This document shows positions 1,576 to 58,779 of a stretch of DNA of 64,000 nt, piece by piece. The stretch's first letter is position 1. Every line of letters begins with the position of its first letter. The notes below the pieces were generated by a model, which worked only from the letters and a program-made list of their open reading frames with translations, was not told the DNA's origin and ran no database searches. The stretch covers positions 204,740 to 268,739 of IMG/VR virus record IMGVR_UViG_3300032296_003307; one strand, 5' to 3'. The translations under genes and the position numbers were made by a program.

Positions 1576-2128
1576 TCAAAAATTTTGTTTCATTTTCACT
1601 TAGATTTGTAACAAAATTTTTGATACTTTCTTGTTGGACTTCGCCAATCTCCCACACTTCATCAACATCTTCATCATTAACATCACTATCGTGATAATCG
1701 GTATCAACCAAATCACCGTAGTCATCTATGTATCCTTCACTTATTAGATAAAGTAGATTTGCCTCTAATTGAGTTGAATCCATAAAATAACCGTCAATTT
1801 CTTGTTCATAATATTTTGTGGACCATTCAGATTCATCTCTTTTGATGCGAGCGCCAAATGTTTTTTTAACAGGTACTTTCATGCTGTCTACCGTTAATGT
1901 GTCATCTTCTAAACGTTCTTTGTTTTCCGCCATCATGTTGTACCAAAAAAACATATCATCCATGTCTTCAGAGTTGGCATTTATTAACTTACCTCGTTTT
2001 TGTAAAAAATAATCAAAATCAGATTCACCCAAATCCCCATAAAAATCATCAACACTGGCATCCCCGTAGTCTTTTTTCCAAAGATTGAATAAGGTTTTTA
2101 ATTCTCTAAATAATTGTTCTTTATTCAT
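1520..2128 (-). CDS. Hypothetical acidic protein
   Basis: 202-aa ORF; its start overlaps the stop of the upstream GH19 gene. Confidence 0.65.
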   Translation of the reverse strand: MNKEQLFRELKTLFNLWKKDYGDASVDDFYGDLGESDFDYFLQKRGKLINANSEDMDDMFFWYNMMAENKERLEDDTLTVDSMKVPVKKTFGARIKRDESEWSTKYYEQEIDGYFMDSTQLEANLLYLISEGYIDDYGDLVDTDYHDSDVNDEDVDEVWEIGEVQQESIKNFVTNLSENETKFLIKKLLSNHRLGHPKSKSR

Positions 2129-2922
2129 TACGCAGTTGTTGCAATATCAAATTTTGGATTCATAGCCAATGCGGCTTTTCTTGACCAATCTGACCTTCTA
2201 TTTCCGGCGTTTATATCTGTAAAATAAATTGTTGCTGATTCTTTATCTTTAAAATCAGGTAATTTTTTTGGGTCTTTACCATTCAAGAAAAATGAGATGG
2301 CAACTTTTGCAGATATTTCCGGTTTTTCCAATAATTCAGGATTGTTTTCCAAATCCACGCCCGCTAATTTACCGTAGTGTCTATAATTTGCTCTTCCGGT
2401 AATTCCATTTAAACCACGCCCAACATATTTCCACCCATCACCTGGTTGAGTATTTCCCAATGGAACACCCGAATCCTTACCGTACACACAATCAAAAAAC
2501 TTTGGGTCATCACATTTTAAAGATTTGCACTTGGTCCCTCTAGCACCAAAAATACTAACAATTCTACTATCACTTGTGGTACAATAACCAAATTCTTTAA
2601 CAGCAACAAATCCTGATTCTTTACCAATAACAGATAAAATACCAATCTGTGCATATGGGTTTGTAATACCCATTTTTTCCATTTCTTGGATAGTCATATC
2701 GACCATTTTTGCGGCTTGACCTGAATAACTGTGTTTAATTTTTCCTGTTATTTTATTTTTTCCGATTGATTCGTTTTCTTTTGTTGATGGTGATGTTCCT
2801 CCACTATTGTTAGAAAATCCAAACATTTTTTTCGCCATACCCAACAAACTATCTTCAGGTTGTTCGTTGACACTCATGAGTTCTCTAACTCTATTTACTT
2901 CTTCAATAAGATTTTGTCTCAT
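2128..2922 (-). CDS. Glycoside hydrolase family 19 (chitinase/lysozyme-like) endolysin or virion lysin
   Basis: KESG catalytic region and GNTQPGDGWKYVGRGLNGITGRANY, the GH19 phage lysozyme signature. TATTTAT motif upstream on the sense strand (2927-2933). Confidence 0.85.
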   Translation of the reverse strand: MRQNLIEEVNRVRELMSVNEQPEDSLLGMAKKMFGFSNNSGGTSPSTKENESIGKNKITGKIKHSYSGQAAKMVDMTIQEMEKMGITNPYAQIGILSVIGKESGFVAVKEFGYCTTSDSRIVSIFGARGTKCKSLKCDDPKFFDCVYGKDSGVPLGNTQPGDGWKYVGRGLNGITGRANYRHYGKLAGVDLENNPELLEKPEISAKVAISFFLNGKDPKKLPDFKDKESATIYFTDINAGNRRSDWSRKAALAMNPKFDIATTA

Positions 2923-2970
2923 AACAATAAATAGCTTGTTTGTTTAAAAAATATTCAATACCTTTGTATT

Positions 2971-3138
2971 ATGATGCCACCAAAATATCTACAAGACCTA
3001 CTTGAAATGTATGACAAGAATCTAACAATGTTCGTAGGCGACGTACCTGTTTTGTTTTTCACCACCACAATTGTACGTGAGGAAGAAGAACCAACAAAAG
3101 CACCAAAAGATAATATTTTACAATGTTCAGCGGGATAA
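2971..3138 (+). CDS. Small hypothetical protein, 55 aa (MMPPKYLQDLLEMYDK...CSAG)
   Basis: Read by eye (below the ORF-track cutoff). Preceded by a TAccTTTG -7 element at 2959-2966. Confidence 0.55.
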   Translation: MMPPKYLQDLLEMYDKNLTMFVGDVPVLFFTTTIVREEEEPTKAPKDNILQCSAG

Positions 3139-3193
3139 CTTGACGCTTTTTTAAAATTGGATATATTTATATCAAAACAAATTAAAACTTTCA

Positions 3194-3262
3194 ATGAAAA
3201 CCATTTTCATATTCGGGACACCAGCAACAGAGGGTGATACTTCCAAAGTGGAGATGGGATAA
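3194..3262 (+). CDS. Putative attenuator leader peptide MKTIFIFGTPATEGDTSKVEMG
   Basis: 22 codons after a TATTTAT motif (3164-3170) and an A-rich leader. Its 3' end overlaps the antiterminator strand GAGATGGG. Confidence 0.7.
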   Translation: MKTIFIFGTPATEGDTSKVEMG

Positions 3263-3315
3263 TATTGTCTTTAAGACCTTAAGAAAACCCATCTCAAAAA
3301 GATGGGTTTTTTTTT
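3251..3315 (+). terminator. Intrinsic terminator with competing antiterminator
   Basis: Terminator AAAACCCATCT(3284-3294)/AGATGGGTTTT(3300-3310) plus a T9 run. Alternative 8-bp helix GAGATGGG(3251-3258)/CCCATCTC(3288-3295). Confidence 0.8.
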
Positions 3316-3487: not shown

Positions 3488-3493
3488 CAAAAC

Positions 3494-3628: not shown

Positions 3629-3634
3629 CAAAAT

Positions 3635-3708: not shown

Positions 3709-3757
3709 CAAACTCAAGGAGTAATTAACCTTGAACTGTCAGGTTCGAAACTGACGA

Positions 3758-3849: not shown

Positions 3850-3853
3850 AAAT

Positions 3854-5354: not shown

Positions 5355-5663
5355 ATGAAACAAAAAATTAATAAACTCGGTGCTTTGGTATCTGTAATGA
5401 TATGGTTTGTTCTTATAACCATCTTAGGTATCTTTTTGACTTCTTGTGGTAAGCCAAAGAACAGGATTGAAAAAGGTGATATTGTTCAGAAGTGTCAGAT
5501 TGATTCTATTAATGTTTTACCACAGCATTCAACAATCGAACCTGACAGGAAGTGTGAATATTTTACAAGTTGTGGAAGTAGAATTGTGTCACATGAAGGC
5601 GCTTTCAGGGTTGGTGATACTGTGACTTACGTATATAAGAAATCTAATAGTCAGAAAAACTGA
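5355..5663 (+). CDS. Putative lipoprotein
   Basis: The likely start is ATG 5355, after TAtcTTTG at 5343-5350. Hydrophobic stretch followed by lipobox LTSC. Confidence 0.7.
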   Translation: MKQKINKLGALVSVMIWFVLITILGIFLTSCGKPKNRIEKGDIVQKCQIDSINVLPQHSTIEPDRKCEYFTSCGSRIVSHEGAFRVGDTVTYVYKKSNSQKN

Positions 5664-6300
5664 TTAACTTTTTTATACGGTTCATAGATTCTGTCATACC
5701 GTCTTGGTAATCATATTTTCCAACATAAACGTCAGGATATTGTACGGTAATTGGATATTTTTTGCCGATTCTTTCCATAATATCATCCTGAATCGCTTCA
5801 GGACTATTCTCACTTAAATCGTCAAGTTCTGATTGAAACATACTTACTTTTTCTTCAAATTCAAAATCACCAAATTCTAAATTTGGGTAATATTTTTCAA
5901 CCACTTCATCCATTTTATTTGTATTTAAATCTCCAATAGTAACTACCGTTCCGTCGGCCATTTTTACAGTGCTGTTTGGATAAATTAAAACAGAATCTAA
6001 TTCTAAATCGTACGAAATTAAAATAGATGAAGTACGTATTGGTTCAATAGCATAATTCGTAACTTTATAAATTAATTTGGCGTAAGGGGTTTCTACAATT
6101 CCGGGGTTTTCAATTACCTCAGAAATAAGTTTAAAATAGTTTTTTTCACCACCGTAATATTCAACAATATAAGGTAAAAAATCTTCCAAGCCCCAACTTT
6201 CTTTCCCTATAAATCTTGAAACTTGATTTAAATTATATACATCAACACCTCTGGCATCCCAAAGTTTAAATAGTACTTTTTTTTCTTGGTCTGTTAACAT
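5644..6300 (-). CDS. Hypothetical protein, paralog of 6302-7084
   Basis: Shares KKxLxxxWxxxG, YYGG and PxST motifs and the C-terminal ESxxRIKxLISFSDY with its neighbour. Confidence 0.75.
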   Translation of the reverse strand: MLTDQEKKVLFKLWDARGVDVYNLNQVSRFIGKESWGLEDFLPYIVEYYGGEKNYFKLISEVIENPGIVETPYAKLIYKVTNYAIEPIRTSSILISYDLELDSVLIYPNSTVKMADGTVVTIGDLNTNKMDEVVEKYYPNLEFGDFEFEEKVSMFQSELDDLSENSPEAIQDDIMERIGKKYPITVQYPDVYVGKYDYQDGMTESMNRIKKLISFSDY

Positions 6301-6301: not shown

Positions 6302-7084
6302 TTAATAATCTGAAAAAGATATTAAATTTTTTATTCTAATTACTGACTCGTTCAGATTTCCCAAATCAAAATCAACAATTTCAACTTTTGGTATATTTGG
6401 TTTTGGTGTAGGTGATGTTTGAACAAAAAATTTTTCTCGGGCAATTTTATTTAAGTAATCACTGGCGTTTTCTTTAATAGTTTCAATTAGTTCCTTAAAA
6501 TCTCCGTATATTTCTTTTTGATATTGTATATATTCTTCGCTACCAACTTCAATTTGAGGTAAATATTTTTCCATAAGTTGTTTGATTCCTAAATTTTTGA
6601 TTTCCAAAACAGGAATATATGTTGTTTCCCTGTTAAGGGTTGTGAACTTAAGAGTTGAACTTGGATGTAAATAAATTTTTTTCAAATACATTTTTGTGTT
6701 TTTAGGAACGCCATTATCATAGTAGGTTTGTACTAATTGTATGTCACCTAATTTTAAAAAAATGGTACCCATTGGGTTAATTAACGAACGGTCTTTTTTT
6801 GTTTCCTTTTTATAGACACCAAACTCCTGTAATATTTTTTCTTTGTATTTTTCTAATCCGCCGTAGTAATCAAAAAATAAATCGGTATAATATTCAGGTT
6901 GTAATTTATCTTTTGTGTAATAACCCACAAAACGTAAATCGCTTTCTAACCTATTTGGGTCAAAACCTTTTTTATTCCAAATAATGGATAGGATTTTTTT
7001 CTGATTTGGTGTTAATCTAGGTTCTCTTAAACCAAAAATTTTTTTTAGGTCAAATTCGTTAATTAGAGAAATTTTATTACCCAT
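6302..7084 (-). CDS. Hypothetical protein, paralog of 5644-6300
   Basis: Same shared motifs as 5644-6300. TATTTAT on the sense strand at 7091-7097. Confidence 0.75.
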   Translation of the reverse strand: MGNKISLINEFDLKKIFGLREPRLTPNQKKILSIIWNKKGFDPNRLESDLRFVGYYTKDKLQPEYYTDLFFDYYGGLEKYKEKILQEFGVYKKETKKDRSLINPMGTIFLKLGDIQLVQTYYDNGVPKNTKMYLKKIYLHPSSTLKFTTLNRETTYIPVLEIKNLGIKQLMEKYLPQIEVGSEEYIQYQKEIYGDFKELIETIKENASDYLNKIAREKFFVQTSPTPKPNIPKVEIVDFDLGNLNESVIRIKNLISFSDY

Positions 7085-7691: not shown

Positions 7692-8318
7692 ATGGATTTT
7701 ACTCAGATTATTATTACCCTGTTAACTTCAATTACTTCTGTTATTGTTGCACTTATAACCGCAGGGTTTATTCGTAGAAAAGATGACAAAGCAAAGGCGG
7801 AAAAATCTAAAAAACAATTAATAGACCAAATTCAAAAAGACGAGTTGATTCACGCAACTCTAAGGGAAATAAGAAGAAAATATAACGCTGATAGAGTATT
7901 CATAACTCAGTTCCATAACGGAGGTACGTTTTATACTAATTCACCAATGCAGAAAGCGTCGGTAACATACGAAAGATGTTCAGATGGATTAAAAAGAATT
8001 GCTGACCAATTTCAGAATTATTTGGTGAGCAATCTTTCTTGGTACGCATCTAAAGTACTTAAAAACCAAGCTTTTTTTTATGACATTGATGAAGTTGTTG
8101 ACGATATAATAATGAAAAGTGTTTTTAAAAATTACTCTACGTGGGCACACGCCGCGGTTCCAATAATGGATAATAATAAAAATCCCATAGCGGTACTTGC
8201 CATGGATTGGGTCATATCAGAACTACCTGTTGAGTATGTCGATGATGAAGATTTTAACGATGAGTTTACCGAAGAATTTACAAAAGACGGAAATTCCTTA
8301 AAAACATACTTAATGTGA
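7692..8318 (+). CDS. Membrane-anchored GAF-like protein, candidate holin
   Basis: Start MDFTQ after TATTTAT 7680-7686. One N-terminal TM helix, then a GAF-like pattern (NADRVFITQFHNG...AVPI...PIAVLAMD). Confidence 0.55.
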   Translation: MDFTQIIITLLTSITSVIVALITAGFIRRKDDKAKAEKSKKQLIDQIQKDELIHATLREIRRKYNADRVFITQFHNGGTFYTNSPMQKASVTYERCSDGLKRIADQFQNYLVSNLSWYASKVLKNQAFFYDIDEVVDDIIMKSVFKNYSTWAHAAVPIMDNNKNPIAVLAMDWVISELPVEYVDDEDFNDEFTEEFTKDGNSLKTYLM

Positions 8319-8330: not shown

Positions 8331-8960
8331 ATGTCTGACATTATTGCAGGAAATTTTCAGTGGAAGTCTAACGGAGGTCCTCGTAATCACCCATCAGGTT
8401 CTTGGAAATTATCTAATGCGTGGGATTTAGAGTCCAGAGAGGGTAATGATGTGTTTTCCGCTGTTAATGGAATGGTAACCGAAAAACAAAGTCCGTCAAC
8501 ACCAGGTCATCTGTATGGTACATCGATAACTATAAGAGGTGAAGGTTCCTACCCAACTATTTTTTATAGTAATTTAAGTTCTGTAAATGTTAACGTAGGG
8601 TCACAAGTTAGAGTCGGTGATAAACTAGGTGAAATTGCAAACGCGCCGGCAGGTACATCCCCTTATATACACATAGCTCTACCAATTGGAAAAGATATAA
8701 CATCGATTATAAGTAACAACGGTTCTTTTGTATCTCCATCTGGTTCATCTTCAGGTGTTGAGGATGCCGCGGTCGCCGCAGGAGCCGCAGGAGCGACTGC
8801 GTTGGCTAGTGGTGATGGTAAAAAAGATAATGGAGATGGTGGAAGTTTTATGGACAAATTTTATGGTACTTTAACCAAAGGTTTATTACCCTTTGGATTA
8901 GTTACGGGTGTTGCCGGTATGAAAGAAGAGGTCGAAAGAATTAAAGAACTTATGAAATAA
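8331..8960 (+). CDS. M23 peptidase-like protein
   Basis: DL...VFSAVNGMV...YGTSITI...YSNL...VNVGSQVRVGDKLG...PYIHI matches the M23 fold pattern; the metal-binding motifs are partly degenerate. Confidence 0.7.
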   Translation: MSDIIAGNFQWKSNGGPRNHPSGSWKLSNAWDLESREGNDVFSAVNGMVTEKQSPSTPGHLYGTSITIRGEGSYPTIFYSNLSSVNVNVGSQVRVGDKLGEIANAPAGTSPYIHIALPIGKDITSIISNNGSFVSPSGSSSGVEDAAVAAGAAGATALASGDGKKDNGDGGSFMDKFYGTLTKGLLPFGLVTGVAGMKEEVERIKELMK

Positions 8961-9282: not shown

Positions 9283-9639
9283 ATGGAACATTTAAAAAAA
9301 ATTATACACGAAAGTTTGGGACGTGTTCTCAAAGAACAAATGGCTGCCCCAATGGAGGGACAAAAACAAGCGACGCAACAACCTCAAAAATCTATTAAAC
9401 CTAAAAAAGACGAAATTAAAGTTCCTGAAAATTGTTTTGGCGGACCTAAAAAACAAGCCGGTGGTTTAGTCGCTTTAATTCAAGTATTAATGAAGGATAG
9501 TGATAGAAACGGTGAAAGAGCGGTTGAGGAAATTAAAAGATTCTCAGAAGGTAAATCTAAACCTGACCCTAAAGAAGTGGTACAAATTTTAAACAAATAC
9601 AACAAACAAAAATATTTGGGATACGCAGGTTGTTTCTAA
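9283..9639 (+). CDS. Hypothetical protein
   Basis: 118 aa; TATTTAT at 9271-9277. Confidence 0.7.
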   Translation: MEHLKKIIHESLGRVLKEQMAAPMEGQKQATQQPQKSIKPKKDEIKVPENCFGGPKKQAGGLVALIQVLMKDSDRNGERAVEEIKRFSEGKSKPDPKEVVQILNKYNKQKYLGYAGCF

Positions 9640-12891: not shown

Positions 12892-14298
12892 ATGCCAAGA
12901 TTTATTCTAACAGAACAAGAAAGAAAAAGGATTCTTGAATTATATCTAAATGAACAAGTGGCTCAAATACCATACCCAACTGGTGTTACTAAAGCCGCGG
13001 TAGACAAAATACTATCTATTTCGGCACAAAATAAAAAAGGTTTAAGAGGTTCTTATTTGGCTCCTTTACAACAACAAGAAATAGACAAAGAATTTGGTAA
13101 AGATACTTTTAAGAAATTTTTTGATGGTGGCGGTAGAGACGTTTTAGACGGAAAAAAAACATTCAAAGATAGTTCTATACCGGAAATTTTAAATTGTGTA
13201 AGATTTGATGAAAAAGATGGAGACACAATGGGAACCTATACTAACGGTAAAAAATATGTTAGAGTTTTTAATCCAAACAGTATTCAAGTTTTTTGGGAGA
13301 CAGGGGCTTTTCAACAATTTGTACGTAAATCGGATAACTCTGCAGGTTCATTAACTAAAAGTGGTACATACGCATGTAACGCACAAAAGAACGATGTGGT
13401 AATTAGCGCCACCGATACAGGTGCAAATACCGGTTCAGTAAATCTTGATTGTGTAAGATTTGATGAAAAAGATGGAGACACAATGGGAACCTATACTAAC
13501 GGTAAAAAATATGTTAGAGTTTTTAATCCAAACAGTATTCAAGTTTTTTGGGAGACAGGAGAATTTCAACAATTTGTGCGTAAAGCAGACAACTCCGCAG
13601 GTCCATTAACTAAAAGCGGAAAATGGTCTTGTAACGCAACAAAAGATAACGTTGTAATAGACACCAACCAAACCGGTTCTACATCAAACAAGACTGAGTG
13701 GATGACATATTTAACTGACTCAGTTTTTAATGGTAAATCAAAACAATATCTAAAATATAAAGACCAAGACTCTGTTTATTTCCCTGATTCTAAAACATAT
13801 TATACTGAGAAAGAATGGTTTACCGTTGATGATTCAGGAAATGTGACAAAATCAGGATATTGGTTCCAAGACAAAAATAAACCTCAAAACAGCCAGTTTA
13901 CGCAAGGTGAAGGTAAAAATCCAAATGAAAAAACTGTTACAGTTGCACCTCCTTTAGAAAATGTTGCAAAAGGAACCGCAAGTATGAAACAGGGTAACCA
14001 AGGTGATTCTGTAAAAACATTACAACAAATGTTAATAGATAAAGGATATTTAAAAATCAATAATCCAACTAATTACTTTGGTAATATGACCTACAATGCG
14101 GTTCTACAGTTCCAAAAAGACAGTCTTTTGAAAAAACAAGATGGTATCGTTGGTTATGAAACATATACTGCCTTGTATAGAGCCCCTGAAGTTCAAAAAA
14201 CACCTGATGTGAACATACAACCAAAAGGAATACAAGCTCAACCACTTTCGTCCGAAACCCCAAAGACACCTACCCAAATAACAATACCCAATAGATAA
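12892..14298 (+). CDS. Protein with a tandem-duplicated domain and C-terminal peptidoglycan-binding domain
   Basis: GNQGDSVKTLQQML...FGNMTYNAVLQFQ...DGIVGYETY matches PG_binding_1; internal 85-aa-period duplication. Confidence 0.8.
   Translation: MPRFILTEQERKRILELYLNEQVAQIPYPTGVTKAAVDKILSISAQNKKGLRGSYLAPLQQQEIDKEFGKDTFKKFFDGGGRDVLDGKKTFKDSSIPEILNCVRFDEKDGDTMGTYTNGKKYVRVFNPNSIQVFWETGAFQQFVRKSDNSAGSLTKSGTYACNAQKNDVVISATDTGANTGSVNLDCVRFDEKDGDTMGTYTNGKKYVRVFNPNSIQVFWETGEFQQFVRKADNSAGPLTKSGKWSCNATKDNVVIDTNQTGSTSNKTEWMTYLTDSVFNGKSKQYLKYKDQDSVYFPDSKTYYTEKEWFTVDDSGNVTKSGYWFQDKNKPQNSQFTQGEGKNPNEKTVTVAPPLENVAKGTASMKQGNQGDSVKTLQQMLIDKGYLKINNPTNYFGNMTYNAVLQFQKDSLLKKQDGIVGYETYTALYRAPEVQKTPDVNIQPKGIQAQPLSSETPKTPTQITIPNR
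13193..13640 (+). repeat. Direct intragenic duplication, period 255 nt
   Basis: 13193-13304 is identical to 13448-13559 (112 nt); similarity continues with mostly third-position changes. Confidence 0.95.
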
Positions 14299-25306: not shown

Positions 25307-27124
25307 ATGAGCGATAATTTAACAATATGGCAAAGGCTGAGTCAGACATTTGGTCCTGATTCACTTCTTGGTCAAGATTCACCAGTATACAAATACGATA
25401 AGAAAGAATTACTTAGAACTACAGATAGAGCTCAATATGAGTTAGAAAAACTACAGGCACAACAAACTGCGTTTCTATCTAATCAATGGGCGAAGATTGA
25501 AAACAATCTGTATCAACAAGCCGTATATTACGAACCAACAAGACTTTCTGCGTTTTATGACTACGAAAGTATGGAATATACTCCTGAAATTTCTGCGGCG
25601 TTAGATGCGTACGCCGAAGAATCTACTACTGTAGATGAAGATGGTTACATGTTACAGATTTATTCCGAATCAAAAAGAATAAAATCAATATTAACCGATT
25701 TGTTTAACAATGTAATGGACATTAACACCAACTTACCTATGTGGACAAGAAACACATGTAAGTATGGTGATAATTTTGTGTTCTTAAAATTGGACCCTGA
25801 AAAAGGAATTGTGGGTTGTTTCCAACTACCTAATATTGAAATGGAGCGTATTGAGAGAGGTATGACACCACAAACAGTGGCAACCGCAGAGAACGAACAA
25901 AAAGCCCTTAAGTTTGCGTGGAAGAACAAACAAATGGAATACCAATCTTGGGAGGTTGCTCACTTCCGTTTATTGGGTGACGATAGAAGATTGCCTTACG
26001 GAACATCTATGTTGGAAAAAGGAAGAAGAACATGGAAACAGTTAGTATTGGCTGAGGACGCAATGTTAATTTACAGAACATCAAGAGCACCTGAAAGACG
26101 TGTATTCAAGGTTTACGTTGGTAACATGGATGACAAAGACGTTCAACCATATGTTCAAAAATTTGCAAACAACTTTAAAAGAGACCAAGTTACCGATTCA
26201 AAAACAGGTAACGTAGACATGAGATTTAACCAAATGGCGGTTGACCAAGATTATTTTGTACCTGTACGTGACCCTGCCGCGCCAAGTCCAATCGATACTT
26301 TACCAGGAGCGCAGAACTTGGCAGAAATTGCTGATATTGAATACATTCAGAAAAAATTATTAACCGCATTAAGAATTCCTAAAGCGTTTTTAGGTTTTGA
26401 AGAAGTTGTGGGTGACGGTAAGAATTTGTCTTTGTTAGATATTCGTTTTGCTCGTACAATTAACAGAATACAAAAATCCATGATTGCAGAACTTAATAAA
26501 ATAGCAATTATACATTTATTCTTGTTAGGGTTCGAAGATGAATTAGGTAACTTTACTTTAGGGTTGACAAACCCATCTAAACAGGCAGACTTGTTAGCGA
26601 TTGATGTTTGGAAAGAAAAAATGTTACTTTATAAAGATGCGGTAACACCAATTGAAGGTATTGCACCAACATCACAATCTTGGGCTAAAAAACATATACT
26701 TGGTTTTTCTGACGATGAGATAAAATTAGATTTACAACAACAAAGATTAGAAAAGGCAGTTTCTGCTGAACTCACAAATACCGCAACTGCAATTCCAAAA
26801 ACAGGTTTATTTGATAATGTTGACAAACTGTACGGTCAACTTAGCGGTAAAACAGGTGGAGCGGTTCCAACACCGGGAGCGGAATTAGGTGGAGCACCTC
26901 CTGATTTAGGTGGCGGAGCACCACCACCACCTCCGCCTCCACCTCCTCCTGGTGGTGAGGAACTTGCTGCGGGTGGCGGAACGTTACCCGAAGAGAAAAT
27001 GGATAAAATAAACATTCTATTGGAAGGAGACTTTTTGACCCCAAATGATTTCTTAGATTTGGGTAAAGCTAAAAATTCTCTGAATGAAATGGATGACGAA
27101 TTAAACAGAATATTAAAATCGTAA
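25307..27124 (+). CDS. Portal protein (T4 gp20-like)
   Basis: LAEDAMLIYRTSRAPERRVFKVYVGNM, DYFVP, IDTLPG and ALRIP are gp20 motifs. Confidence 0.95.
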   Translation: MSDNLTIWQRLSQTFGPDSLLGQDSPVYKYDKKELLRTTDRAQYELEKLQAQQTAFLSNQWAKIENNLYQQAVYYEPTRLSAFYDYESMEYTPEISAALDAYAEESTTVDEDGYMLQIYSESKRIKSILTDLFNNVMDINTNLPMWTRNTCKYGDNFVFLKLDPEKGIVGCFQLPNIEMERIERGMTPQTVATAENEQKALKFAWKNKQMEYQSWEVAHFRLLGDDRRLPYGTSMLEKGRRTWKQLVLAEDAMLIYRTSRAPERRVFKVYVGNMDDKDVQPYVQKFANNFKRDQVTDSKTGNVDMRFNQMAVDQDYFVPVRDPAAPSPIDTLPGAQNLAEIADIEYIQKKLLTALRIPKAFLGFEEVVGDGKNLSLLDIRFARTINRIQKSMIAELNKIAIIHLFLLGFEDELGNFTLGLTNPSKQADLLAIDVWKEKMLLYKDAVTPIEGIAPTSQSWAKKHILGFSDDEIKLDLQQQRLEKAVSAELTNTATAIPKTGLFDNVDKLYGQLSGKTGGAVPTPGAELGGAPPDLGGGAPPPPPPPPPPGGEELAAGGGTLPEEKMDKINILLEGDFLTPNDFLDLGKAKNSLNEMDDELNRILKS

Positions 27125-27135: not shown

Positions 27136-27843
27136 ATGAACTTCGGAGAAAAATTTAGTAAAATAGAGTTTTTGTTGTCAGAATCTTACGTTAACAAAAA
27201 CTTAAAAAATGATATCAAAAAATTCCAAAAATTAGTTTTGGAAAATAAAAACGTTGCAAAAATGTATTTTTTGTATTCGGAGCTATCTAAACAACAAGGA
27301 TTTGATAAGAATTTTGCTGAAGATTTTATTACGGAATCTCTTTCACAAATTAAAGATTTATCATCTAAAACAAACTTCAAATCAATCAATCCTTGGATTT
27401 CTAAAGTTGTTTGTGAGAATAGATATTCTGATATAGATAATTTGATAAACAATGACCCTCTGAAATTAAAAGAAAAAATATTAGCAAAATCAAAAATAGT
27501 TGAGTCGTTGACCAAAAAATCAATTCAAAAAGAAAGTGTTAATATTCCTTTAAGTTCAGTTGAGGTTATCAGAAAAAATGTGGTAAAAAACTATATCGAT
27601 TCATTAGATGAATCCACTCAGAATAGTTTAAAAAATCTTTTATCTAAAGACGACAAAGAATTAAAAAATTTATTTGAAGATGTTAAGTCAAAAACTTTAG
27701 ATAAATTAATGGTCGTTTCTGAAGGTAACCACGACGAACTTACCAAGAACAAAATCAACGAAACTATTACGCATGTTAAGAAAGAAGAGTACAACAAATT
27801 CAACTACGTTAGATTAAAGAATCTATACGAAAATTTAGGTTGA
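27136..27843 (+). CDS. Hypothetical protein (head module)
   Basis: 235 aa; TATTTAT at 27125-27131. Confidence 0.75.
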   Translation: MNFGEKFSKIEFLLSESYVNKNLKNDIKKFQKLVLENKNVAKMYFLYSELSKQQGFDKNFAEDFITESLSQIKDLSSKTNFKSINPWISKVVCENRYSDIDNLINNDPLKLKEKILAKSKIVESLTKKSIQKESVNIPLSSVEVIRKNVVKNYIDSLDESTQNSLKNLLSKDDKELKNLFEDVKSKTLDKLMVVSEGNHDELTKNKINETITHVKKEEYNKFNYVRLKNLYENLG

Positions 27844-28601: not shown

Positions 28602-29312
28602 ATGAAGATTTTAGGACCAAACGATACGGGGCGTGGTATTTTGATTGAGTACGATGCGGGATACATTTCCCCAACCGAAAAACACAACCTTCATTTGATG
28701 GAGCAAATGAAGAAGGACATGTTAGATTATTCAAAACCATTTGAATTCTATGCCGTACTACAAAAATACAACACACCAAATAGAAACGGAAGAATATATC
28801 CTGAAAGGATTTTGAAAAGAGAATCGGAAAATTATAAAAAGATGATTCAAAAAGGTACCTCTTTATCAGAGTTGAACCACCCTGAATCATCTTTAATTGA
28901 TTTGGACCGTGTATCACACATTATCACTGACATTTGGTGGGATGGTATAATTTTGATGGGTAAATTAAAATTATTGACTTCGCCAGGTTTTCATGAAAGA
29001 GGTATTGTTTCAACCAAGGGAGACCAAGCGGCTAACTTACTAAGACAGGGGGTTACTTTAGGTATTTCTTCTCGTGGAGTTGGTTCGTTAAAAAAAGTAG
29101 GTGAAAGAAATGAAGTGCAAGACGATTTTGAATTAATTTGTTTTGATTTAGTATCGTCACCGTCTACACCTGGCGCGTATCTATTCTTGGACCCAAAAGA
29201 AAGAAGTAATTTTGAAGAAAATTTGGAAGAAGAAATACAAAGGAAATCGCAAGGCTCAATTGATAAATCAGTTGACTTAATGAAGAAATTAACCGATTAT
29301 TTATCAAAATAA
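28602..29312 (+). CDS. Prohead core protease (T4 gp21-like)
   Basis: NRNGRIYP, ELNHP, VSH, GISSRGVGS and FDLVSSPSTPGA motifs. Confidence 0.95.
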   Translation: MKILGPNDTGRGILIEYDAGYISPTEKHNLHLMEQMKKDMLDYSKPFEFYAVLQKYNTPNRNGRIYPERILKRESENYKKMIQKGTSLSELNHPESSLIDLDRVSHIITDIWWDGIILMGKLKLLTSPGFHERGIVSTKGDQAANLLRQGVTLGISSRGVGSLKKVGERNEVQDDFELICFDLVSSPSTPGAYLFLDPKERSNFEENLEEEIQRKSQGSIDKSVDLMKKLTDYLSK

Positions 29313-33517: not shown

Positions 33518-34195
33518 ATGTCTAACAAAAAAACAATATCAGAGATAACGGGCACGGGCGGTTCAGGTTCTTTCAAAATTCCTTTGAATTTGGCACCTAG
33601 AATGTGGACAAAAGAACAGATGGGTGCGTTTACAGAACCAGTATCACACTACTTAAACCCAAACGTCGCATATGATAGTTATGACGGGACATTAAAAATG
33701 AGTAAACAGGAAATAAACAAACAAGAAAAAAAGGCTAAAAAAATGGCTAATTTTATGAAAAAAATTGAAAACGAGTTACCAAAGGGGACTCCTAAGTACA
33801 TACAAACCCAAGCTAATTTACCCAAAGACGAATATAAACCCGTACTACAAGAAGATTTAGCGGTTTGGTTCGGTAAAAAGAAAAAAGGTAAAGGTAGCTC
33901 CCAACCACAAGGACCATGGGTTAATATTTGTAGAAAAAAAGAAGGCGGTGGTCATCCACCTTGTGGCAGACCAGATGCCGACCCTAAAGGATACCCAAAG
34001 TGTAGAGCTGCCGGAGTGGCGGCAAAAATGACAGATTCGCAAAAAAAATCCGCATGTGCTCAAAAAAGAAGAGAAGAAAAAAAGGACACACAATCAGGTA
34101 AAGGTCAAAAACCGGTTATGACCTCATACAAACCTAAAAATGAATCTTTAAGAGAAATTATTGTTTCTATTCTTAGAGAAGAAACTTCTATTTAA
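33518..34195 (+). CDS. Hypothetical protein with a Cys-containing basic C-terminal module
   Basis: WF...WVNIC...PCGR...YPKCR...CAQKR; TATTTAT at 33500-33506. Confidence 0.7.
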   Translation: MSNKKTISEITGTGGSGSFKIPLNLAPRMWTKEQMGAFTEPVSHYLNPNVAYDSYDGTLKMSKQEINKQEKKAKKMANFMKKIENELPKGTPKYIQTQANLPKDEYKPVLQEDLAVWFGKKKKGKGSSQPQGPWVNICRKKEGGGHPPCGRPDADPKGYPKCRAAGVAAKMTDSQKKSACAQKRREEKKDTQSGKGQKPVMTSYKPKNESLREIIVSILREETSI

Positions 34196-34639: not shown

Positions 34640-35119
34640 TTAACAATATGTACCTGAACATCTTTTTTTTCCATCTAAACCAGGCATTTTTCCTTTACAT
34701 ACTTGAACCGCATATCCGTTTGCGTAAGCCGAAGGGTATACGTCAAATTTGGCTTTAGCTGCAGATTTACCTCTTGCACATAACTTAGTGCCTGTTTTTT
34801 TTCTACCCTCAGTCATAGTATCAATCATTTGGTCATCCATTTCTTCATCATCGGAACCTTCCGTTTCATTCATTAAAAAATCAAATACTTGGTCCATATT
34901 GTTTTTTGCTTCGGCAATATGGTCTTGAGCCCAATCATGACCATTATCTAAAATACCTTCAATTACGGATTTATCCATATCAAGAAGTATTTCGCACTGT
35001 CTTTTCATTTGTTCTAAATTGGAAAAAAACATATACCTGTTTGATTCTACACCACCACCTTCATTAAGAAGTTTATTTATTATTCTTTTTAAATCGTTTT
35101 CTGATAATTTTGTTCTCAT
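34640..35119 (-). CDS. Hypothetical protein (C-terminal CARG...YPSAYANG...C motif)
   Basis: 159-aa ORF overlapping the upstream stop. Confidence 0.7.
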   Translation of the reverse strand: MRTKLSENDLKRIINKLLNEGGGVESNRYMFFSNLEQMKRQCEILLDMDKSVIEGILDNGHDWAQDHIAEAKNNMDQVFDFLMNETEGSDDEEMDDQMIDTMTEGRKKTGTKLCARGKSAAKAKFDVYPSAYANGYAVQVCKGKMPGLDGKKRCSGTYC

Positions 35120-56992: not shown

Positions 56993-57041
56993 CTTATTCT
57001 TTTCAGAAAAAGATACAAAAAATTACGTAAAAATCAAAAGA

Positions 57042-57632
57042 TTACTTAAGTTTTTTAATTTTAGAGATTTTTCCTTCAAAAATATGTTGACCAACTCTGA
57101 ATGAAAATAAATCATTTGATTTTGATGTTGACTCAACTAATAAACCGCTTTCAGATAAAATCTCACGTACGGCTTCTTTTACCATCTTTTTAATGTTTTG
57201 TGTTTCAGAGACATTTTGTCTTTGAGGTTGTCCTTGAGGTTGTTTCTTTACGGTTGTTTCTTCTTCTGAAAACAAATCTTTTTTCATTAATCTCGCCGCT
57301 TTGTTAACCAATTCATCACTTATTGATGGTCCCGCCATGGACGCAGGAGGTGCGATTGGATGCTCAATCATCAGTCTTTTTATTTCGTCAGGTAATTTAG
57401 AACTCATAATTCTATCCTTAGTTTGTGGAACTGGTGTTGAATTTTGTTTTTGTATTACCGCTTGTTCTGACATTAAAAAATCTTGTGGTATATTATACGA
57501 AGCTTGAGGTGTGTCAAAGTTTTCTACTATTGGATTAGAAACTGATTTATTGGCTCTAGGTGTATCGTTGTGTCTATCCATTATTTTTTTAGACACCATT
57601 AATTTCTGCATTAAAGAATTTTCGTCCATCAT
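57042..57632 (-). CDS. Hypothetical protein
   Basis: 196-aa ORF. Confidence 0.7.
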   Translation of the reverse strand: MMDENSLMQKLMVSKKIMDRHNDTPRANKSVSNPIVENFDTPQASYNIPQDFLMSEQAVIQKQNSTPVPQTKDRIMSSKLPDEIKRLMIEHPIAPPASMAGPSISDELVNKAARLMKKDLFSEEETTVKKQPQGQPQRQNVSETQNIKKMVKEAVREILSESGLLVESTSKSNDLFSFRVGQHIFEGKISKIKKLK

Positions 57633-57644
57633 ATTACTATATTA

Positions 57645-58025
57645 TCAAAATTTACTATTAATTATAACACGATTCATGCTTTTGTCACCATTAAAATTGT
57701 ATCCTGGTCTTGGAGTGTTAAATTTTTCTGTTGTTGGTTTAAACGACATTATTTTATCTAATCTAAATAATCTCCAAGAAGGTAAAGGTAAAACACCTAA
57801 GTACGCTTTGTGAGACGAGCCTTCATAGTCCCAAGCTCTTAAAACCAAGTTATTCGCCTTAGAATACCCTAAACATACAGGTTCTATTAAACGCAGACCT
57901 TTACCGCCAGGTTCGTCCCCGTCATAATAGATTACCGTGATATCTTTGTTTTTTATTGCTTTTTGAACGTCATTCAAATTAGCAACCTCCAACAGAATAC
58001 CTTTTAAGGTGTTTGTTAATTTCAT
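57645..58025 (-). CDS. Stand-alone WYL-domain protein
   Basis: AI.....V.IYY......G.R.IEP..LG......LRAW......WRLFRLDKI. Confidence 0.75.
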   Translation of the reverse strand: MKLTNTLKGILLEVANLNDVQKAIKNKDITVIYYDGDEPGGKGLRLIEPVCLGYSKANNLVLRAWDYEGSSHKAYLGVLPLPSWRLFRLDKIMSFKPTTEKFNTPRPGYNFNGDKSMNRVIINSKF

Positions 58026-58315
58026 TAAAAATCGGGATACCTTTTATTCTTATTGTATTTGTTTATTTTTATTTCAAGTTTTCTTTCAACTACATCTATA
58101 CTAGTACCCGCATCTTCATTGAAGATATCTAAAAATACTCCTGTACCCCTACCCAAAGTATCTCCATCGGCAATTGCGTCAGGTGAAGTAACTGAGTATT
58201 CGTCTGCTTTAGGCGTGTAGTCGTTTTTAACTTGGTTTACAACTCTTTGTCTGTCAGCAATTGCGGTTAACAAGTTAGTTGGTTGTGAATAATCTAAAGG
58301 GATTAAAGTTGCCAT
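58025..58315 (-). CDS. Hypothetical protein
   Basis: 96 aa, overlapping both neighbours. Confidence 0.65.
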   Translation of the reverse strand: MATLIPLDYSQPTNLLTAIADRQRVVNQVKNDYTPKADEYSVTSPDAIADGDTLGRGTGVFLDIFNEDAGTSIDVVERKLEIKINKYNKNKRYPDF

Positions 58316-58779
58316 AAATTTTCCATTAATTGATTTATCCTTTTGAGGCTGTTTAGTGCTTGCTCATTCATGTGTTTATCAACACCTGATTTGTGCGATT
58401 TTGATGGGGAATTGTTCATGTTTGATAATTGAGGTGAATAGTCTCTGTCCATTTGCATTCCCGTTTCTCTTTTGTTTCTGTCGGTCATTTCTAAACCTCT
58501 ACGAGCACCTGATAAGATAGATTCAACAAATTGTTTCATTTTAAGACCCCCATTTAAATTAAATTCAGGTCCATTTTGGTCACCTTTAAAAGAATCGAAA
58601 AAATTTTTAATTCTTTTTGCTTGTTGATATGTCATAGAGGTAGACCCTTGTAATTGTCTATTTCTTTCAAACCCGTCCTTACCTTGACCCGCAGCGCCGT
58701 GTTGTCGATACATATCTATAAGATGTTTTCTAACATCTTCAGGCATTTCGAATTTTTGACCATATAAATTACTATTCAT
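58303..58779 (-). CDS. Hypothetical protein
   Basis: 158 aa. Confidence 0.7.
   Translation of the reverse strand: MNSNLYGQKFEMPEDVRKHLIDMYRQHGAAGQGKDGFERNRQLQGSTSMTYQQAKRIKNFFDSFKGDQNGPEFNLNGGLKMKQFVESILSGARRGLEMTDRNKRETGMQMDRDYSPQLSNMNNSPSKSHKSGVDKHMNEQALNSLKRINQLMENLWQL

What the first reader, a model, noticed from the sequence alone, without database searches (positions are those of the whole stretch)
2128..58779. Portable (L/M/I)xE...RIKxL amphipathic tag on unrelated proteins: possible capsid-targeting and prohead-protease signal
Seen at protein termini: MRQNLIEEVNRVRELMSVNEQ (GH19, N), MTESMNRIKKLISFSDY and LNESVIRIKNLISFSDY (5644 and 6302, C), MKEEVERIKELMK (M23-like, C), MPRFILTEQERKRILELYLNEQ (PG-binding, N), LKKIIHESLGRVLKEQ (9283, N), MRTKLSENDLKRIINKLLNE (34640, N), NESLREIIVSILREE (33518, C), MNEQALNSLKRINQLM (58303, C), MKLTNTLKGILLE (WYL, N). 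The major capsid protein has FLINE/AA near residue 60. Established: T4 gp21 cleaves after Glu in (I/L)xE, and T4 internal proteins carry a cleavable capsid-targeting peptide. Inference: a modular tag loads cargo (wall hydrolases, WYL protein) into the prohead for removal by the protease and later ejection. Most carriers also have the TATTTAT motif.
Basis: partly seen in the sequence, partly recalled or inferred. Interest (0 to 1): 0.7.

Follow-up and report, generated by a model that had tools for sequence, protein, structure and literature searches.

The report
Scaffold-like terminal tag on phage proteins
An uncultured freshwater giant phage puts one short helical tag, near-identical to the tail end of its own capsid-scaffold protein, on either end of about 25 unrelated proteins, most likely to load them into the capsid, though no experiment shows this yet.

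Summary
The core R-[IVM]-[KRNL]-x-L-[MILY] occurs 11 times in the 268.7-kb phage genome. All 11 lie within 30 residues of a protein end (0.65 expected). The enrichment repeats in three complete relatives.

New here: the same motif ends the scaffold-position protein just upstream of the major capsid protein. It is near-invariant there in 80 relatives. It also ends that protein in four distant Far-T4 phages. Tag-like helices end the S77 prohead protease, the portal and a head-module protein.

Homologous GH19 wall hydrolases from metagenomes carry interchangeable N- or C-terminal tags. Some share 7-mers (RMKDLMK) with scaffold ends. On the cargo side, a hydrophobic-x-Glu site is enriched, matching the T4-type protease cleavage pattern.

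Best reading (about 0.55): a capsid-targeting peptide copied from the scaffold C-terminus and removed by the protease. It is a T4 CTS-like system that works from either end.

Binding, packaging, cleavage and ejection are all inferred. The phage is known only from metagenomes.

Cautions:
- C-tagged lysins sit near a holin in three of five genomes examined.
- The clade encodes a Clp-type unfoldase.
- The "WYL" item is not a tag.
- TATTTAT is a general promoter-like element, not tag-specific.

The parts
2860..2922 (-). N-terminal tag MRQNLIEEVNRVRELMSVNEQ of the GH19 protein (gene 2128-2922).
   Evidence: Located. Pfam GH19; PHROG endolysin phrog_181. The AF2 model has a helix at 3-15, a disordered stretch at 16-59 and a confident GH19 domain at 60-264. 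Homologues carry interchangeable tags.
5647..5697 (-). C-terminal tag MTESMNRIKKLISFSDY of an orphan 218-aa protein (gene 5644-6300).
   Evidence: It is a paralogue of 6302 at 24% identity, and the tag is the best-conserved part.
6305..6355 (-). C-terminal tag LNESVIRIKNLISFSDY of an orphan 260-aa protein (gene 6302-7084).
   Evidence: The word-indexed search of 5.8 billion proteins returned only the protein itself.
7692..8318 (+). Membrane-anchored protein directly upstream of the C-tagged M23 peptidase. It is a homologue of the 'p203' gene that follows the holin in relatives.
   Evidence: tblastn; gene order. This is context for the lysis-cassette rival.
8919..8957 (+). C-terminal tag MKEEVERIKELMK of an M23 peptidase (gene 8331-8960).
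   Evidence: A homologous M23 domain carries the tag at the N-terminus in genome gene 121953-122591 and at the C-terminus in relative G001 280814-281530.
9283..9339 (+). N-terminus MEHLKKIIHESLGRVLKEQ of a 118-aa orphan. It is a weak, loose-variant tag.
   Evidence: Located. It does not match the strict core and has no orthologues in three relatives. It is supported only by resemblance to the 34640-type variants.
12892..12957 (+). N-terminal tag MPRFILTEQERKRILELYLNEQ ('type B') of a 468-aa protein with a PG_binding_1 domain (gene 12892-14298).
   Evidence: The same type-B tag is on 23 GH19 homologue clusters.
27080..27121 (+). C-terminal amphipathic helix LNEMDDELNRILKS of the T4-type portal (gene 25307-27124).
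   Evidence: Portal_T4. The helix is conserved as ..NSLGEIExQLxKLLxD in relatives. It is tag-like but below the statistical threshold.
27787..27840 (+). C-terminal tag ..YNKFNYVRLKNLYENLG of an uncharacterised head-module protein (gene 27136-27843).
   Evidence: Relatives conserve Y[FY]KLKxLNExL. Its hydrophobic-x-Glu density is 4.7 per 100 aa against 2.06 genome-wide.
28602..29312 (+). Prohead protease of the T4 gp21 family. Its C-terminal helix ..SVDLMKKLTDYLSK (29268-29309) is tag-like.
   Evidence: Peptidase_S77 at E 2e-23; phrog_207. The C-terminus is conserved as KS[LI]DLMKKLxxYLxK; in L070 it reads NRMKNLMSKLDSYLGK. The T4 gp21 C-terminus ..ALAEAMKKAL is similar.
29647..31290 (+). Scaffold-position protein: 547 aa, acidic, repeat-rich, between protease and capsid genes. 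Its last 24 residues LIESKTYENPQFLRMKDLMGKLQK (31216-31287) are the prototype of the tag.
   Evidence: Sequence; hydrophobic-x-Glu density is 5.3 per 100 aa. The C-terminus is near-invariant in 80 relatives although protein length varies from 460 to 669 aa. The Arg is invariant, including in four distant Far-T4 phages. There is no Pfam or PHROG hit and no profile match to T4 gp22, so 'scaffold' rests on position and composition.
31490..31504 (+). FLINE followed by AA at residues 56-60 of the gp23-type major capsid protein (gene 31325-33208). This is the likely maturation cleavage site.
   Evidence: Located; Pfam Gp23. L-I-N-E-A is invariant in relatives. T4 gp23 has FLTE/AE at the equivalent place.
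33518..34195 (+). Conserved neighbour of the capsid gene. Its short N-terminal propeptide-like stretch ends ISE before ITGTGGSGSF (33518-33544). It also has an optional C-terminal tag NESLREIIVSILREE (34139-34183).
   Evidence: Orthologues read ..IIKKVIKE/STG....QIKE/ATGTGGSGSF. The C-terminal tag is present in some orthologues and absent in others that end ..MVSYKPKKK.
35060..35119 (-). N-terminal tag MRTKLSENDLKRIINKLLNE of a conserved 159-aa protein (gene 34640-35119).
   Evidence: In 22 orthologues the extension varies in sequence and length, but Glu20 is invariant and always sits in hydrophobic-x-Glu. A variable linker and the conserved core RYMFFSNLEQ follow. AF2 gives a helix at 7-20, a break at 20-25 and a helical bundle at 29-90.
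58324..58371 (-). C-terminal tag MNEQALNSLKRINQLM(ENLWQL) of a 158-aa protein (gene 58303-58779).
   Evidence: Orthologues in all three complete relatives keep a C-terminal tag, for example ..VTESLKRINDLIKKII.
57987..58025 (-). N-terminus MKLTNTLKGILLE of gene 57645-58025.
   Evidence: There is no Arg core. The whole 126-aa protein is conserved from residue 1. The WYL hit is below the Pfam cutoff, and there is no PHROG hit.

Best explanation
What it is. The tag is a 12-20-residue amphipathic helix with the consensus hydrophobic-x-E-x-x-x-R-[IVM]-[KL]-x-[LM]-[MYI]. N-terminal copies are often followed by G-L-x-E. It is a copy of the extreme C-terminus of the phage's own scaffold-position protein.

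Proposed mechanism.
1. During prohead assembly, the tag docks where the scaffold's C-terminal helix docks. That place is either the inner face or N-terminal propeptide of the gp23-type capsid protein, or the scaffold core itself.
2. Any protein carrying the tag at either end, on a flexible linker, is therefore built into the prohead core. The scaffold, the S77 protease and other core proteins are built in the same way.
3. The S77 (T4 gp21-family) protease then cuts after Glu in hydrophobic-x-Glu sites between tag and cargo. The tag peptides leave and the cargo stays inside with the DNA.
4. The cargo may be delivered to the next host.

The cargo set is large and fast-evolving: about 25 genes in this genome. 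It includes GH19, M23 and peptidoglycan-binding proteins, a P-loop kinase-like protein and many orphans.

Shown here: the motif, its terminal position, its identity with the scaffold end, its portability, its conservation, the enriched Glu sites, and the presence of the S77 protease and a capsid propeptide site.

Inferred: binding, packaging, cleavage and ejection.
For: 1. Terminal enrichment is strong and replicated.

2. The motif ends the scaffold-position protein.
- It is the best-conserved part of that protein in 80 relatives.
- It is also at the C-terminus of the equivalent protein in immuto (..SRWQKLAGIIK), Mel-JY01 (..ERMKKLAGIVK), RM378 (..ERIKRLAGL) and LR756508 (..SRMQKLADIS).

3. 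In immuto, the lineage-specific variant R.Q.LAGI occurs three times in the proteome against 0.04 expected. One copy ends the scaffold. The other two are N-termini of two other proteins. The cargo tags thus follow the scaffold variant.

4. The tag is portable.
- Of 120 GH19 homologue clusters, 20 carry an N-terminal type-C tag, 23 type B and 1 type A.
- Another 24 are two-domain lysins carrying a C-terminal tag ..R[IM]K[DN][IL][IM]KK[IV]L.
- The 7-mers RMKDLMK, MKDLMKK and KDLMKKI are shared with scaffold C-termini.
- Homologous M23 domains carry the tag at the N- or the C-terminus.

5. The protease C-terminus is tag-like (in L070 it reads RMKNLMSKL). The portal and the 27136 protein also end in conserved helices of this kind.

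6. T4-type machinery is present: Peptidase_S77, Gp23 and Portal_T4, with an invariant LINE/A site in the capsid protein.

7. Hydrophobic-x-Glu is enriched on the cargo side.
- N-terminal tags: 19 of 25 against a background of 0.19.
- C-terminal tags: 12 of 16 against a background of 0.27.
- The Glu at the end of the tag is invariant in 22 orthologues of 34640.

8. The architecture is tag, flexible linker, then globular domain.

9. Precedent in T4: internal proteins share only a cleavable capsid-targeting sequence, and gp21 trims core and shell proteins (PMC3012670, PMC5694885). The T4 gp24 N-terminus MAKINELLRE/S resembles the ..IRRILREE variants.

10. An untagged PG_binding_1+GH19 protein, typical of an endolysin, exists elsewhere in the genome. 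The tagged hydrolases are therefore additional enzymes.
Against: - There is no direct evidence of binding, packaging or cleavage.
- The phage is a metagenome assembly and no cultured member of its clade exists.
- The scaffold assignment rests on position and composition only. The profile comparison with T4 gp22 found nothing.
- The Glu four residues before the Arg could be a helix salt-bridge partner rather than a cleavage site.
- The counts of Glu sites are inflated by paralogues and orthologues.
- Mel-JY01 and RM378 have the scaffold motif but no tagged cargo. Tagging is lineage-specific, so the motif's first role is something the scaffold does on its own.
- In three of five genomes examined, a C-tagged lysin or C-tagged protein lies within a few genes of a holin. 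This could mean a role in lysis.
- A Clp-type unfoldase is encoded in this clade.
- Packaging some 25 enzymes, including 400-aa two-domain lysins, is more than T4 is known to do.
Confidence: 0.55

Rival explanations
1. The tag is a lysis-related module. Under this reading, the tagged wall hydrolases are the endolysins or accessory lysis enzymes. The amphipathic helix would regulate or localise them, for example by membrane association near holin lesions or by sequestration until lysis. The similarity to the scaffold end would be convergent or reflect a shared partner unrelated to packaging.
For: - Gene order holin, membrane protein, then a C-tagged VanY or VanY+GH19 lysin is found in G003 and L169. 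G002 has the same order, but its C-tagged 259-aa protein has no Pfam family.
- In the window and in G001, a membrane protein is followed by a C-tagged M23 peptidase.
- The holin family Phage_holin_10 is confirmed.
- Four of the Pfam-identifiable cargoes in this genome act on peptidoglycan.
Against: - The tag is also on non-lytic proteins: a P-loop kinase-like protein, a zinc-ribbon protein and many orphans. It is also on the scaffold, and similar helices end the protease and a head-module protein.
- N-terminal tags are net acidic and C-terminal tags about neutral (read from the sequences). Cationic membrane-targeting helices look different.
- The gene run is not purely lytic. A pyrimidine-dimer glycosylase sits inside it.
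- In the window's genome and in G001, the holin lies 8-13 kb from the tagged lysins.
- An untagged endolysin-type protein exists.
- From my own knowledge, not tested here: enzymes that are both virion parts and lysis enzymes are known, for example PRD1 P15. Proximity to a holin therefore does not exclude packaging.
Confidence: 0.15
2. The tag is a recognition peptide (degron or adaptor site) for the phage-encoded ClpC/ClpB-like double AAA+ unfoldase. That enzyme would unfold, remodel or hand over tagged proteins.
For: - A 668-aa protein with AAA_2, AAA_lid_9, ClpB_D2-small and UVR domains lies at 14300-16306, between the tagged-lysin genes and the head module.
- It is conserved in the three complete relatives and sits next to the same neighbours in L169.
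- From general knowledge: AAA+ unfoldases read short peptides at either terminus and need a flexible stretch next to them. The tag architecture matches this.
Against: - Immuto has tagged proteins but no Clp homologue.
- Scaffold-position proteins of the Clp-less phages Mel-JY01 and RM378 also carry the motif.
- This reading does not explain the protease-type Glu sites or the tag-like helices on protease and portal.
Confidence: 0.08
3. The tag is a docking site (exosite) for the S77 protease. It would mark proteins for activation or processing without their being stably packaged.
For: The tag co-occurs with hydrophobic-x-Glu sites. The S77 protease is present.
Against: - The protease itself ends in a tag-like helix. 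That fits co-assembly better than self-docking.
- T4 gp21 acts on prohead core and shell proteins (PMC5694885). Processing by such an enzyme would therefore imply presence in the prohead anyway.
Confidence: 0.1
4. There is no shared function. The similarity would come from composition (a K/E/I/L/N-rich proteome), from generic terminal helices, or from common descent of paralogues.
For: The genome has 32% GC. Some listed items are weak (9283, 33518, the portal) or wrong (WYL; the 42238 C-terminus is not conserved in orthologues).
Against: - Both global and terminal-composition shuffles are exceeded, and the result repeats in three other genomes.
- The tag sits on unrelated folds and swaps ends on homologous domains.
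- Synonymous codon variation points to selection on the protein.
Confidence: 0.03

Closest known systems
T4 capsid-targeting sequence (CTS) of internal proteins IPI-III, Alt and gp24
   Same: Both are short terminal peptides on otherwise unrelated, fast-evolving proteins. Both end in hydrophobic-x-Glu. Both occur in a phage with a gp21-family protease, a gp23-type capsid protein with a cleaved propeptide and a proteolysed core (PMC3012670, PMC5694885). The ..IRRILREE variants resemble the T4 gp24 N-terminus MAKINELLRE.
   Different: Here the tag works from the N- or the C-terminus. It is longer (12-20 aa plus a linker of up to about 45 aa). It has a different consensus with an invariant Arg. 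It matches the scaffold-position protein's own C-terminus; the T4 gp22 C-terminus (..VSVYAKVASRF) has no such motif. The cargo set is much larger and includes wall hydrolases. Packaging is proven in T4 and not here.
Scaffold C-terminal capsid-binding helices and their mimics (P22 gp8; phage 80alpha scaffold and SaPI1 CpmB; herpesvirus protease and scaffold sharing a C-terminal tail; HK97 protease C-terminal targeting signal)
   Same: In both cases a conserved helix at the extreme C-terminus of a scaffold is also carried by other proteins that must enter the procapsid, notably the protease. The known examples are from my own knowledge and were not checked in papers here.
   Different: In the known cases one or two proteins share the tail, and it is always C-terminal. 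Here about 25 proteins share it, at either end, with apparent proteolytic removal. The binding partner is unknown.
Encapsulin cargo-loading peptides
   Same: Both are short terminal peptides on a flexible linker that would load diverse enzymes into an HK97-fold shell. In both, the peptide can sit at either terminus (my own knowledge).
   Different: The consensus differs. Encapsulins have no scaffold, no protease and no DNA. There is no evidence of common descent.
Long N-terminal propeptides of phiKZ/SPN3US head and ejection proteins
   Same: Both are giant phages with many processed inner-head proteins. In both, propeptides are thought to target proteins to the prohead and are removed at x-Glu motifs by a gp21-related protease (PMC5694885).
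   Different: Those propeptides are 80-160 aa, have no common short motif and are N-terminal only. A scaffold counterpart is not known there.

Membership tests
T4-type capsid-targeting sequence (CTS) | A short terminal propeptide shared by otherwise unrelated proteins | tested here: met
   The tag is found on GH19, M23, PG_binding_1 and P-loop kinase-like proteins and on orphans. It is interchangeable on homologous GH19 domains.
T4-type capsid-targeting sequence (CTS) | Located at the N-terminus | tested here: not met
   About a third of the copies are C-terminal: 5644, 6302, 8331, 27136, 29647 and 58303, plus 24 lysin clusters.
T4-type capsid-targeting sequence (CTS) | Ends in a (L/I)-x-Glu site cut by the gp21-family protease | tested here: inconclusive
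   The sequence pattern is present: 19 of 25 N-terminal tags, and an invariant Glu20 in the 34640 family. Cleavage itself cannot be tested with these tools.
T4-type capsid-targeting sequence (CTS) | The phage has a gp21-family protease, a gp23-type capsid protein with a propeptide and a gp20-type portal | tested here: met
   Peptidase_S77 at 2e-23, Gp23 at 7e-72 and Portal_T4 at 7e-78. The LINE/A site is invariant.
T4-type capsid-targeting sequence (CTS) | Directs proteins, including foreign ones, into the prohead | not testable with these tools
   This needs virion proteomics or tag-GFP packaging.
Scaffold C-terminal capsid-binding tail shared with other procapsid proteins | The motif lies at the extreme C-terminus of the scaffold and is conserved while the rest diverges | tested here: met
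   Seen in 80 relatives and four distant Far-T4 phages, with an invariant Arg. Caveat: scaffold identity rests on position and composition only.
Scaffold C-terminal capsid-binding tail shared with other procapsid proteins | The same tail is on the maturation protease | tested here: inconclusive
   The protease ends ..LDLMKKLxDYL, and in one relative ..RMKNLMSKLDSYLGK. It is similar, but usually lacks the Arg.
Scaffold C-terminal capsid-binding tail shared with other procapsid proteins | The tail binds the major capsid protein | not testable with these tools
   One complex job was run and gave no verdict. That is not evidence either way.
AAA+ (Clp) degron | The tag occurs only where the cognate unfoldase is encoded | tested here: not met
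   Clp is absent from immuto, Mel-JY01 and RM378. All three carry the scaffold motif, and immuto also has two tagged cargo proteins.
   17.8 bits against a cutoff of 21.8, E 0.0035.
T4 gp22 scaffold family | Detectable sequence or profile similarity to T4 gp22 | tested here: not met
   hhalign of the N-terminal profile against T4 gp22 gave probability 0.2%. There is no Pfam or PHROG hit.

The most novel reading that the evidence does not exclude
Far-T4 giant phages would use a position-independent cargo-loading code. Any protein given a copy of the scaffold's C-terminal helix, at either end, is built into the prohead and freed by the S77 protease. These abundant freshwater phages would then carry two dozen or more fast-evolving enzymes in the capsid and co-inject them. 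The cargo would include multi-domain wall hydrolases and kinases. In effect, this would be an encapsulin-like loading system in a tailed phage, evolved by mimicry of the scaffold.
Probability: 0.4. Interest if true: 0.75.

Novelty: new variant of a known kind. Interest (0 to 1): 0.6.

Why it matters
If true, three things follow.
- It gives a readable sequence signature for predicting which proteins of a very abundant, uncultured phage group travel inside the capsid into the host. The scaffold family alone has at least 8000 clusters at 90% identity in metagenomes. Such proteins are candidates for entry enzymes and anti-defence factors.
- It suggests how capsid-targeting peptides arise, namely by copying the scaffold's own docking helix.
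- It offers a compact tag, usable at either terminus, for loading foreign proteins into T4-type capsids.

If the lysis or Clp reading is right instead, the motif still marks a shared regulatory handle on about 25 phage proteins. No such handle is annotated in Pfam or PHROGs for these proteins.

Tried and rejected
- tblastn of 23-27-aa tag peptides against the phage collection found nothing, because the queries were too short.
Searches for cultured relatives with virion proteomics found none. The Far-T4 paper does not mention scaffold or prohead proteins.
I removed those sequences and did not send them to any folding tool.
- The repeated job paired the capsid protein with the last 60 residues of the scaffold. 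It returned 'no answer'. I do not use it as evidence either way.
- The genome search with the 17-column tag profile found nothing in immuto, Mel-JY01, RM378 or LR756508. Direct reading and regexes then found the scaffold motif in all four and two cargo tags in immuto.
- The profile comparison of the scaffold N-terminus with T4 gp22 found no similarity.
- tblastn with the Mel-JY01 scaffold reached only immuto and LR756508.
- T4 gp22 and S-PM2 gp22 lack the C-terminal motif. It is therefore not general to T4-like phages.
- The homologue search for the 6302 protein found only the protein itself.
- The AF2 model of 34640 was too uncertain outside residues 29-90 for a fold search.
- I rejected two candidate tags: the 42238 C-terminus, which is not conserved in orthologues, and the 57645 'WYL' N-terminus.
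- I tested whether tagged cargo is less conserved than other genes. Homologues exist in the three relatives for 5 of 26 tagged proteins against 103 of 262 others, p = 0.055. This is a trend only.
- Several '-' strand references were offset by one codon, so the first Met was dropped. This does not affect the results. Corrected references were used from then on.

Full report
**Context.** The window is the last 64 kb of a single-contig genome of 268,739 bp with 32% GC. It encodes a T4-type head module: large terminase, Portal_T4, Peptidase_S77 prohead protease and a Gp23-type major capsid protein. The nearest sequenced phages are distant, at 31-46% capsid-protein identity. They are an uncultured 484-kb phage (LR756508), Microcystis phage Mel-JY01, Flavobacterium phage immuto and Rhodothermus phage RM378. 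RM378 is the reference member of the 'Far-T4' group described from freshwater viromes (PMC4360716). The sequence is held almost complete in many lake and reservoir metagenomes. IMG/VR holds hundreds of relatives with 73-90% capsid identity. Three are complete or nearly complete genomes of 272-321 kb. No cultured member of this clade was found, so there are no virion proteomics.

- There are 11 matches, all within 30 residues of a terminus. Shuffled proteins give 2.05 matches, of which 0.65 are terminal.
- When only the terminal 35 residues are shuffled, the N-terminal count is 5 against 0.40 and the C-terminal count is 6 against 0.33. None of 500 shuffles reaches either value.
- The three complete relatives replicate the result: 7/9, 5/7 and 6/6 hits are terminal.
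- A tag HMM finds 22 hits there, 20 of them terminal, against about 0.3 in shuffles.
- An HMM built only from C-terminal copies ranks N-terminal carriers at the top, and the reverse also holds. The two forms are one motif.
- Tag codons vary synonymously and upstream DNA is not conserved. This argues against a DNA-level cause.

**Extent in this genome.** There are about 25 carriers.
- Type A: MNLQExIxRIKEMMGL grading into MNLQESIRRILREE. It is on nine or more adjacent small genes at 131-136 kb and 151-153 kb, including a P-loop kinase-like protein.
- Type B: RFxITExEKxRILxLY.
- Type C: LNEExxRILxLMGLNEQ. It is on the GH19 protein and on a second M23 peptidase.
- Type D: MKDIIRxNQLAGIITEGQ.
- C-terminal copies: 5644, 6302, the M23 peptidase 8331, 58303, 27136 and the scaffold-position protein.

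**The key new fact.** The 547-aa acidic, repeat-rich protein between the protease and capsid genes ends in ..NLIESKTYENPQFLRMKDLMGKLQK.
- In 80 relatives this tail is almost invariant, while the protein's length ranges from 460 to 669 aa.
- The equivalent proteins of distant Far-T4 phages end in ..SRWQKLAGIIK (immuto)..ERMKKLAGIVK (Mel-JY01)..ERIKRLAGL (RM378) and ..SRMQKLADIS (LR756508). The Arg is invariant.
- T4 gp22 and cyanophage S-PM2 gp22 do not have it. The motif is thus an old feature of the Far-T4 scaffold-position protein.
- In immuto, the lineage's own variant R.Q.LAGI occurs three times against 0.04 expected. One copy ends the scaffold. The other two are N-termini reading MKKQILSEQF[KR]RMQ[FK]LAGIITES. 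Cargo tags thus follow the scaffold variant.
- Mel-JY01 and RM378 have the scaffold motif but no cargo copies. This suggests the direction of evolution was from scaffold to cargo.
- The protease C-terminus is conserved as ..KSLDLMKKLxDYLGK. In one relative it reads ..NRMKNLMSKLDSYLGK, and T4 gp21 ends ..ALAEAMKKAL.
- The portal and the head-module protein 27136 also end in conserved helices of this style.

**Portability.** A search with the tagged GH19 protein returned 120 homologue clusters.
- The same catalytic domain carries an N-terminal type-C tag in 20 clusters, type B in 23 and type A in 1.
- In 24 clusters it is part of a two-domain lysin (Amidase_2, M23 or VanY plus GH19). These end in ..hydrophobic-x-E-[ED]-x-x-R-[IM]-K-[DN]-[IL]-[IM]-K-K-[IV]-L.
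- The 7-mers RMKDLMK, MKDLMKK and KDLMKKI are shared between these lysin ends and scaffold ends.
- More distant homologues carry PG_binding_1 or a lipoprotein-like signal and no tag.
- Within the clade, a homologous M23 domain has the tag at the N-terminus in one gene and at the C-terminus in another.
- Orthologues of 33518 have, or lack, a C-terminal tag.
- The alignment and the AF2 model of the GH19 protein show a helix at residues 3-15, about 45 disordered and hypervariable residues, then a confident enzyme domain. The 34640 family shows the same plan.

**Protease sites.**
- The capsid protein has an invariant L-I-N-E/A at residue 60. This parallels FLTE/AE in T4 gp23.
- Hydrophobic-x-Glu density is 5.3 per 100 aa in the scaffold-position protein and 4.7 in 27136, against 2.06 genome-wide. 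T4 core proteins are likewise chopped by gp21 (PMC5694885).
- On the cargo side of the tag, the site is present in 19 of 25 N-terminal tags (background 0.19) and in 12 of 16 C-terminal tags (background 0.27). These counts are not independent.
- The cleanest case is the 34640 family. The N-terminal extension varies in sequence and length, yet its last Glu is invariant and always sits in hydrophobic-x-Glu. A variable linker and the conserved core follow.
- Caveat: the Glu four residues before the Arg is part of the motif in both forms. It could be an i/i+4 helix salt-bridge partner rather than a cleavage site.

**Mechanism proposed.** The tag docks where the scaffold's C-terminal helix docks, either on the capsid protein's inner face or propeptide, or on the scaffold core. 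Tagged proteins are co-assembled into the prohead. The S77 protease then removes the tag. This is the logic of the T4 capsid-targeting sequence, under which diverse internal proteins share only a cleavable targeting peptide (PMC3012670, PMC5694885). There are three differences:
- the tag works from either end;
- it has a different consensus;
- it is visibly derived from the scaffold's own terminus.

It also recalls procapsid proteases and satellite scaffolds that share the scaffold's capsid-binding tail, and encapsulin cargo peptides. These comparisons rest on my own knowledge.

**What speaks against it, and the rivals.** Nothing here shows binding, packaging or cleavage.
- *Scaffold identity.* It is by position and composition only.
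- *Lysis context.*
  - In G003 and L169 a C-tagged VanY or VanY+GH19 lysin lies a few genes after a Phage_holin_10 holin and a membrane protein.
  - G002 has the same order, but its C-tagged protein has no recognised domain.
  - In the window and in G001, the C-tagged M23 peptidase follows a membrane protein. A lysis-related role for the tag on lysins is therefore a live rival.
  - Against it: the tag is on non-lytic proteins and on head proteins, and the N-terminal tags are net acidic.
  - Against it also: a DNA glycosylase sits inside the same gene run, and an untagged PG_binding_1+GH19 endolysin-type gene exists elsewhere.
- *Clp unfoldase.* The clade encodes a ClpC/ClpB-like double AAA+ protein next to the tagged genes. 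Terminal degrons for this enzyme would also explain tags at either end followed by a flexible stretch. However, immuto has tags and no Clp, and Clp-less phages keep the scaffold motif.
- *Pure composition or shared paralogy.* This is excluded by the statistics and by the domain swaps.

**Verdict.**
I put about 0.55 on a scaffold-derived, protease-removable prohead-targeting tag.
- Ejection of the cargo and wall digestion at entry are less certain.
- It is a new variant of a known kind (T4 CTS and scaffold-tail mimicry), found in an abundant group of uncultured phages.
- The cultured phage immuto makes it directly testable.

Noticed in passing
window 3416-7641: There is an array of 12 tRNA genes on the + strand: Glu, Thr, Leu, Met x3, Gly x2, Asp, Ala, Pro and Ile-TAT. 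They lie among the tagged genes. Many short ORFs listed here are artefacts that overlap tRNAs.
   Followed up: partly
whole genome; for example window 2923-2940, 8319-8330 and 12879-12891: TATTTAT lies within 60 nt upstream of 104 of 379 genes. It has a sharp peak 12 nt before the ATG (32 genes at -12, 12 at -13, 8 at -11). This looks like a promoter with almost no leader. A longer variant, AATATTTATAAC, at more variable distance dominates the first 110 kb. It is not specific to tagged genes.
   Followed up: partly
window 27844-28032 (-): A ribosomal protein bS21 homologue (Pfam Ribosomal_S21, E 3e-10) sits inside the head module on the opposite strand. Mel-JY01 has an annotated S21 gene at the equivalent place.
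   Followed up: partly
window 14300-16306 (-): The phage encodes a ClpC/ClpB-like double AAA+ ATPase with AAA_2, AAA_lid_9, ClpB_D2-small and UVR domains and no Clp_N domain. It is conserved in three relatives. In G002 it is split by an insertion of about 1.6 kb. It is absent from immuto, Mel-JY01 and RM378. In L169 an HSP70 gene lies next to it.
   Followed up: partly
window 41433-56992 (-): A long minus-strand cluster of sugar-modification genes is present: GDP-mannose 4,6-dehydratase, a DegT-type aminotransferase, a GFO/IDH/MocA oxidoreductase and several family-2 glycosyltransferases. A PolB-exonuclease-like gene at 55080-55781 lies within it.
   Followed up: partly
window 33518-33580 and 31490-31540: The predicted mature N-terminus of the 33518 protein and its orthologues (..E/ATGTGGSGSF) resembles that of the capsid protein (..INE/ATSDGSSGSF). 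The two may share an extended protease recognition site, or the protein may mimic the capsid N-arm.
   Followed up: no
window 31364-31393: The invariant segment G-L-K-H-L-K-V-I-K-E in the capsid propeptide (residues 14-23) resembles the ..IIKKVLKE type-A tag variants. This is by eye only and has no statistical support.
   Followed up: no
genome 175125-175949 (outside the window; L089:15125-15949): A second GH19 protein has an N-terminal PG_binding_1 domain and no tag. It is the likely canonical endolysin. The holin (Phage_holin_10) is at genome 199600-199767.
   Followed up: partly
G002 117830-119101 and 97421-98713 (L128, L127): Two internal tag matches occur in relative G002..EEINRIKEMMGIVLNEQ at residue 318 of 423, and ..TNLQESIRRIIREE at residue 317 of 430. 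They look like fusions of an upstream ORF with a tagged gene whose start codon was lost, or like true internal tags.
   Followed up: no
window 62303-64000 (+): GC rises to 40% here. An ORF runs off the contig end inside a long Gly-Thr-Ser / Gly-Ser-Ser triplet repeat that resembles collagen. Joined to the genome start, the frame closes at residue 686. The assembly probably broke in this repeat of a circularly permuted genome.
   Followed up: partly
window 34955-34975 (protein residues 100-106 of gene 34640-35119): A second conserved hydrophobic-x-Glu site, (V/M)M(M/T)E/G(R/K)KK, follows an acidic variable linker in the 34640 family. It may be an internal processing site that separates a helical bundle from a Cys-rich C-terminal part.
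   Followed up: no
window 11994-12863 and 21970-23469: An M20/M42-type peptidase-like gene is present, just below the Pfam cutoffs. Its counterpart sits next to the Clp gene in L169. A 499-aa protein just upstream of the terminase carries a CBM_5_12 carbohydrate-binding module.
   Followed up: no
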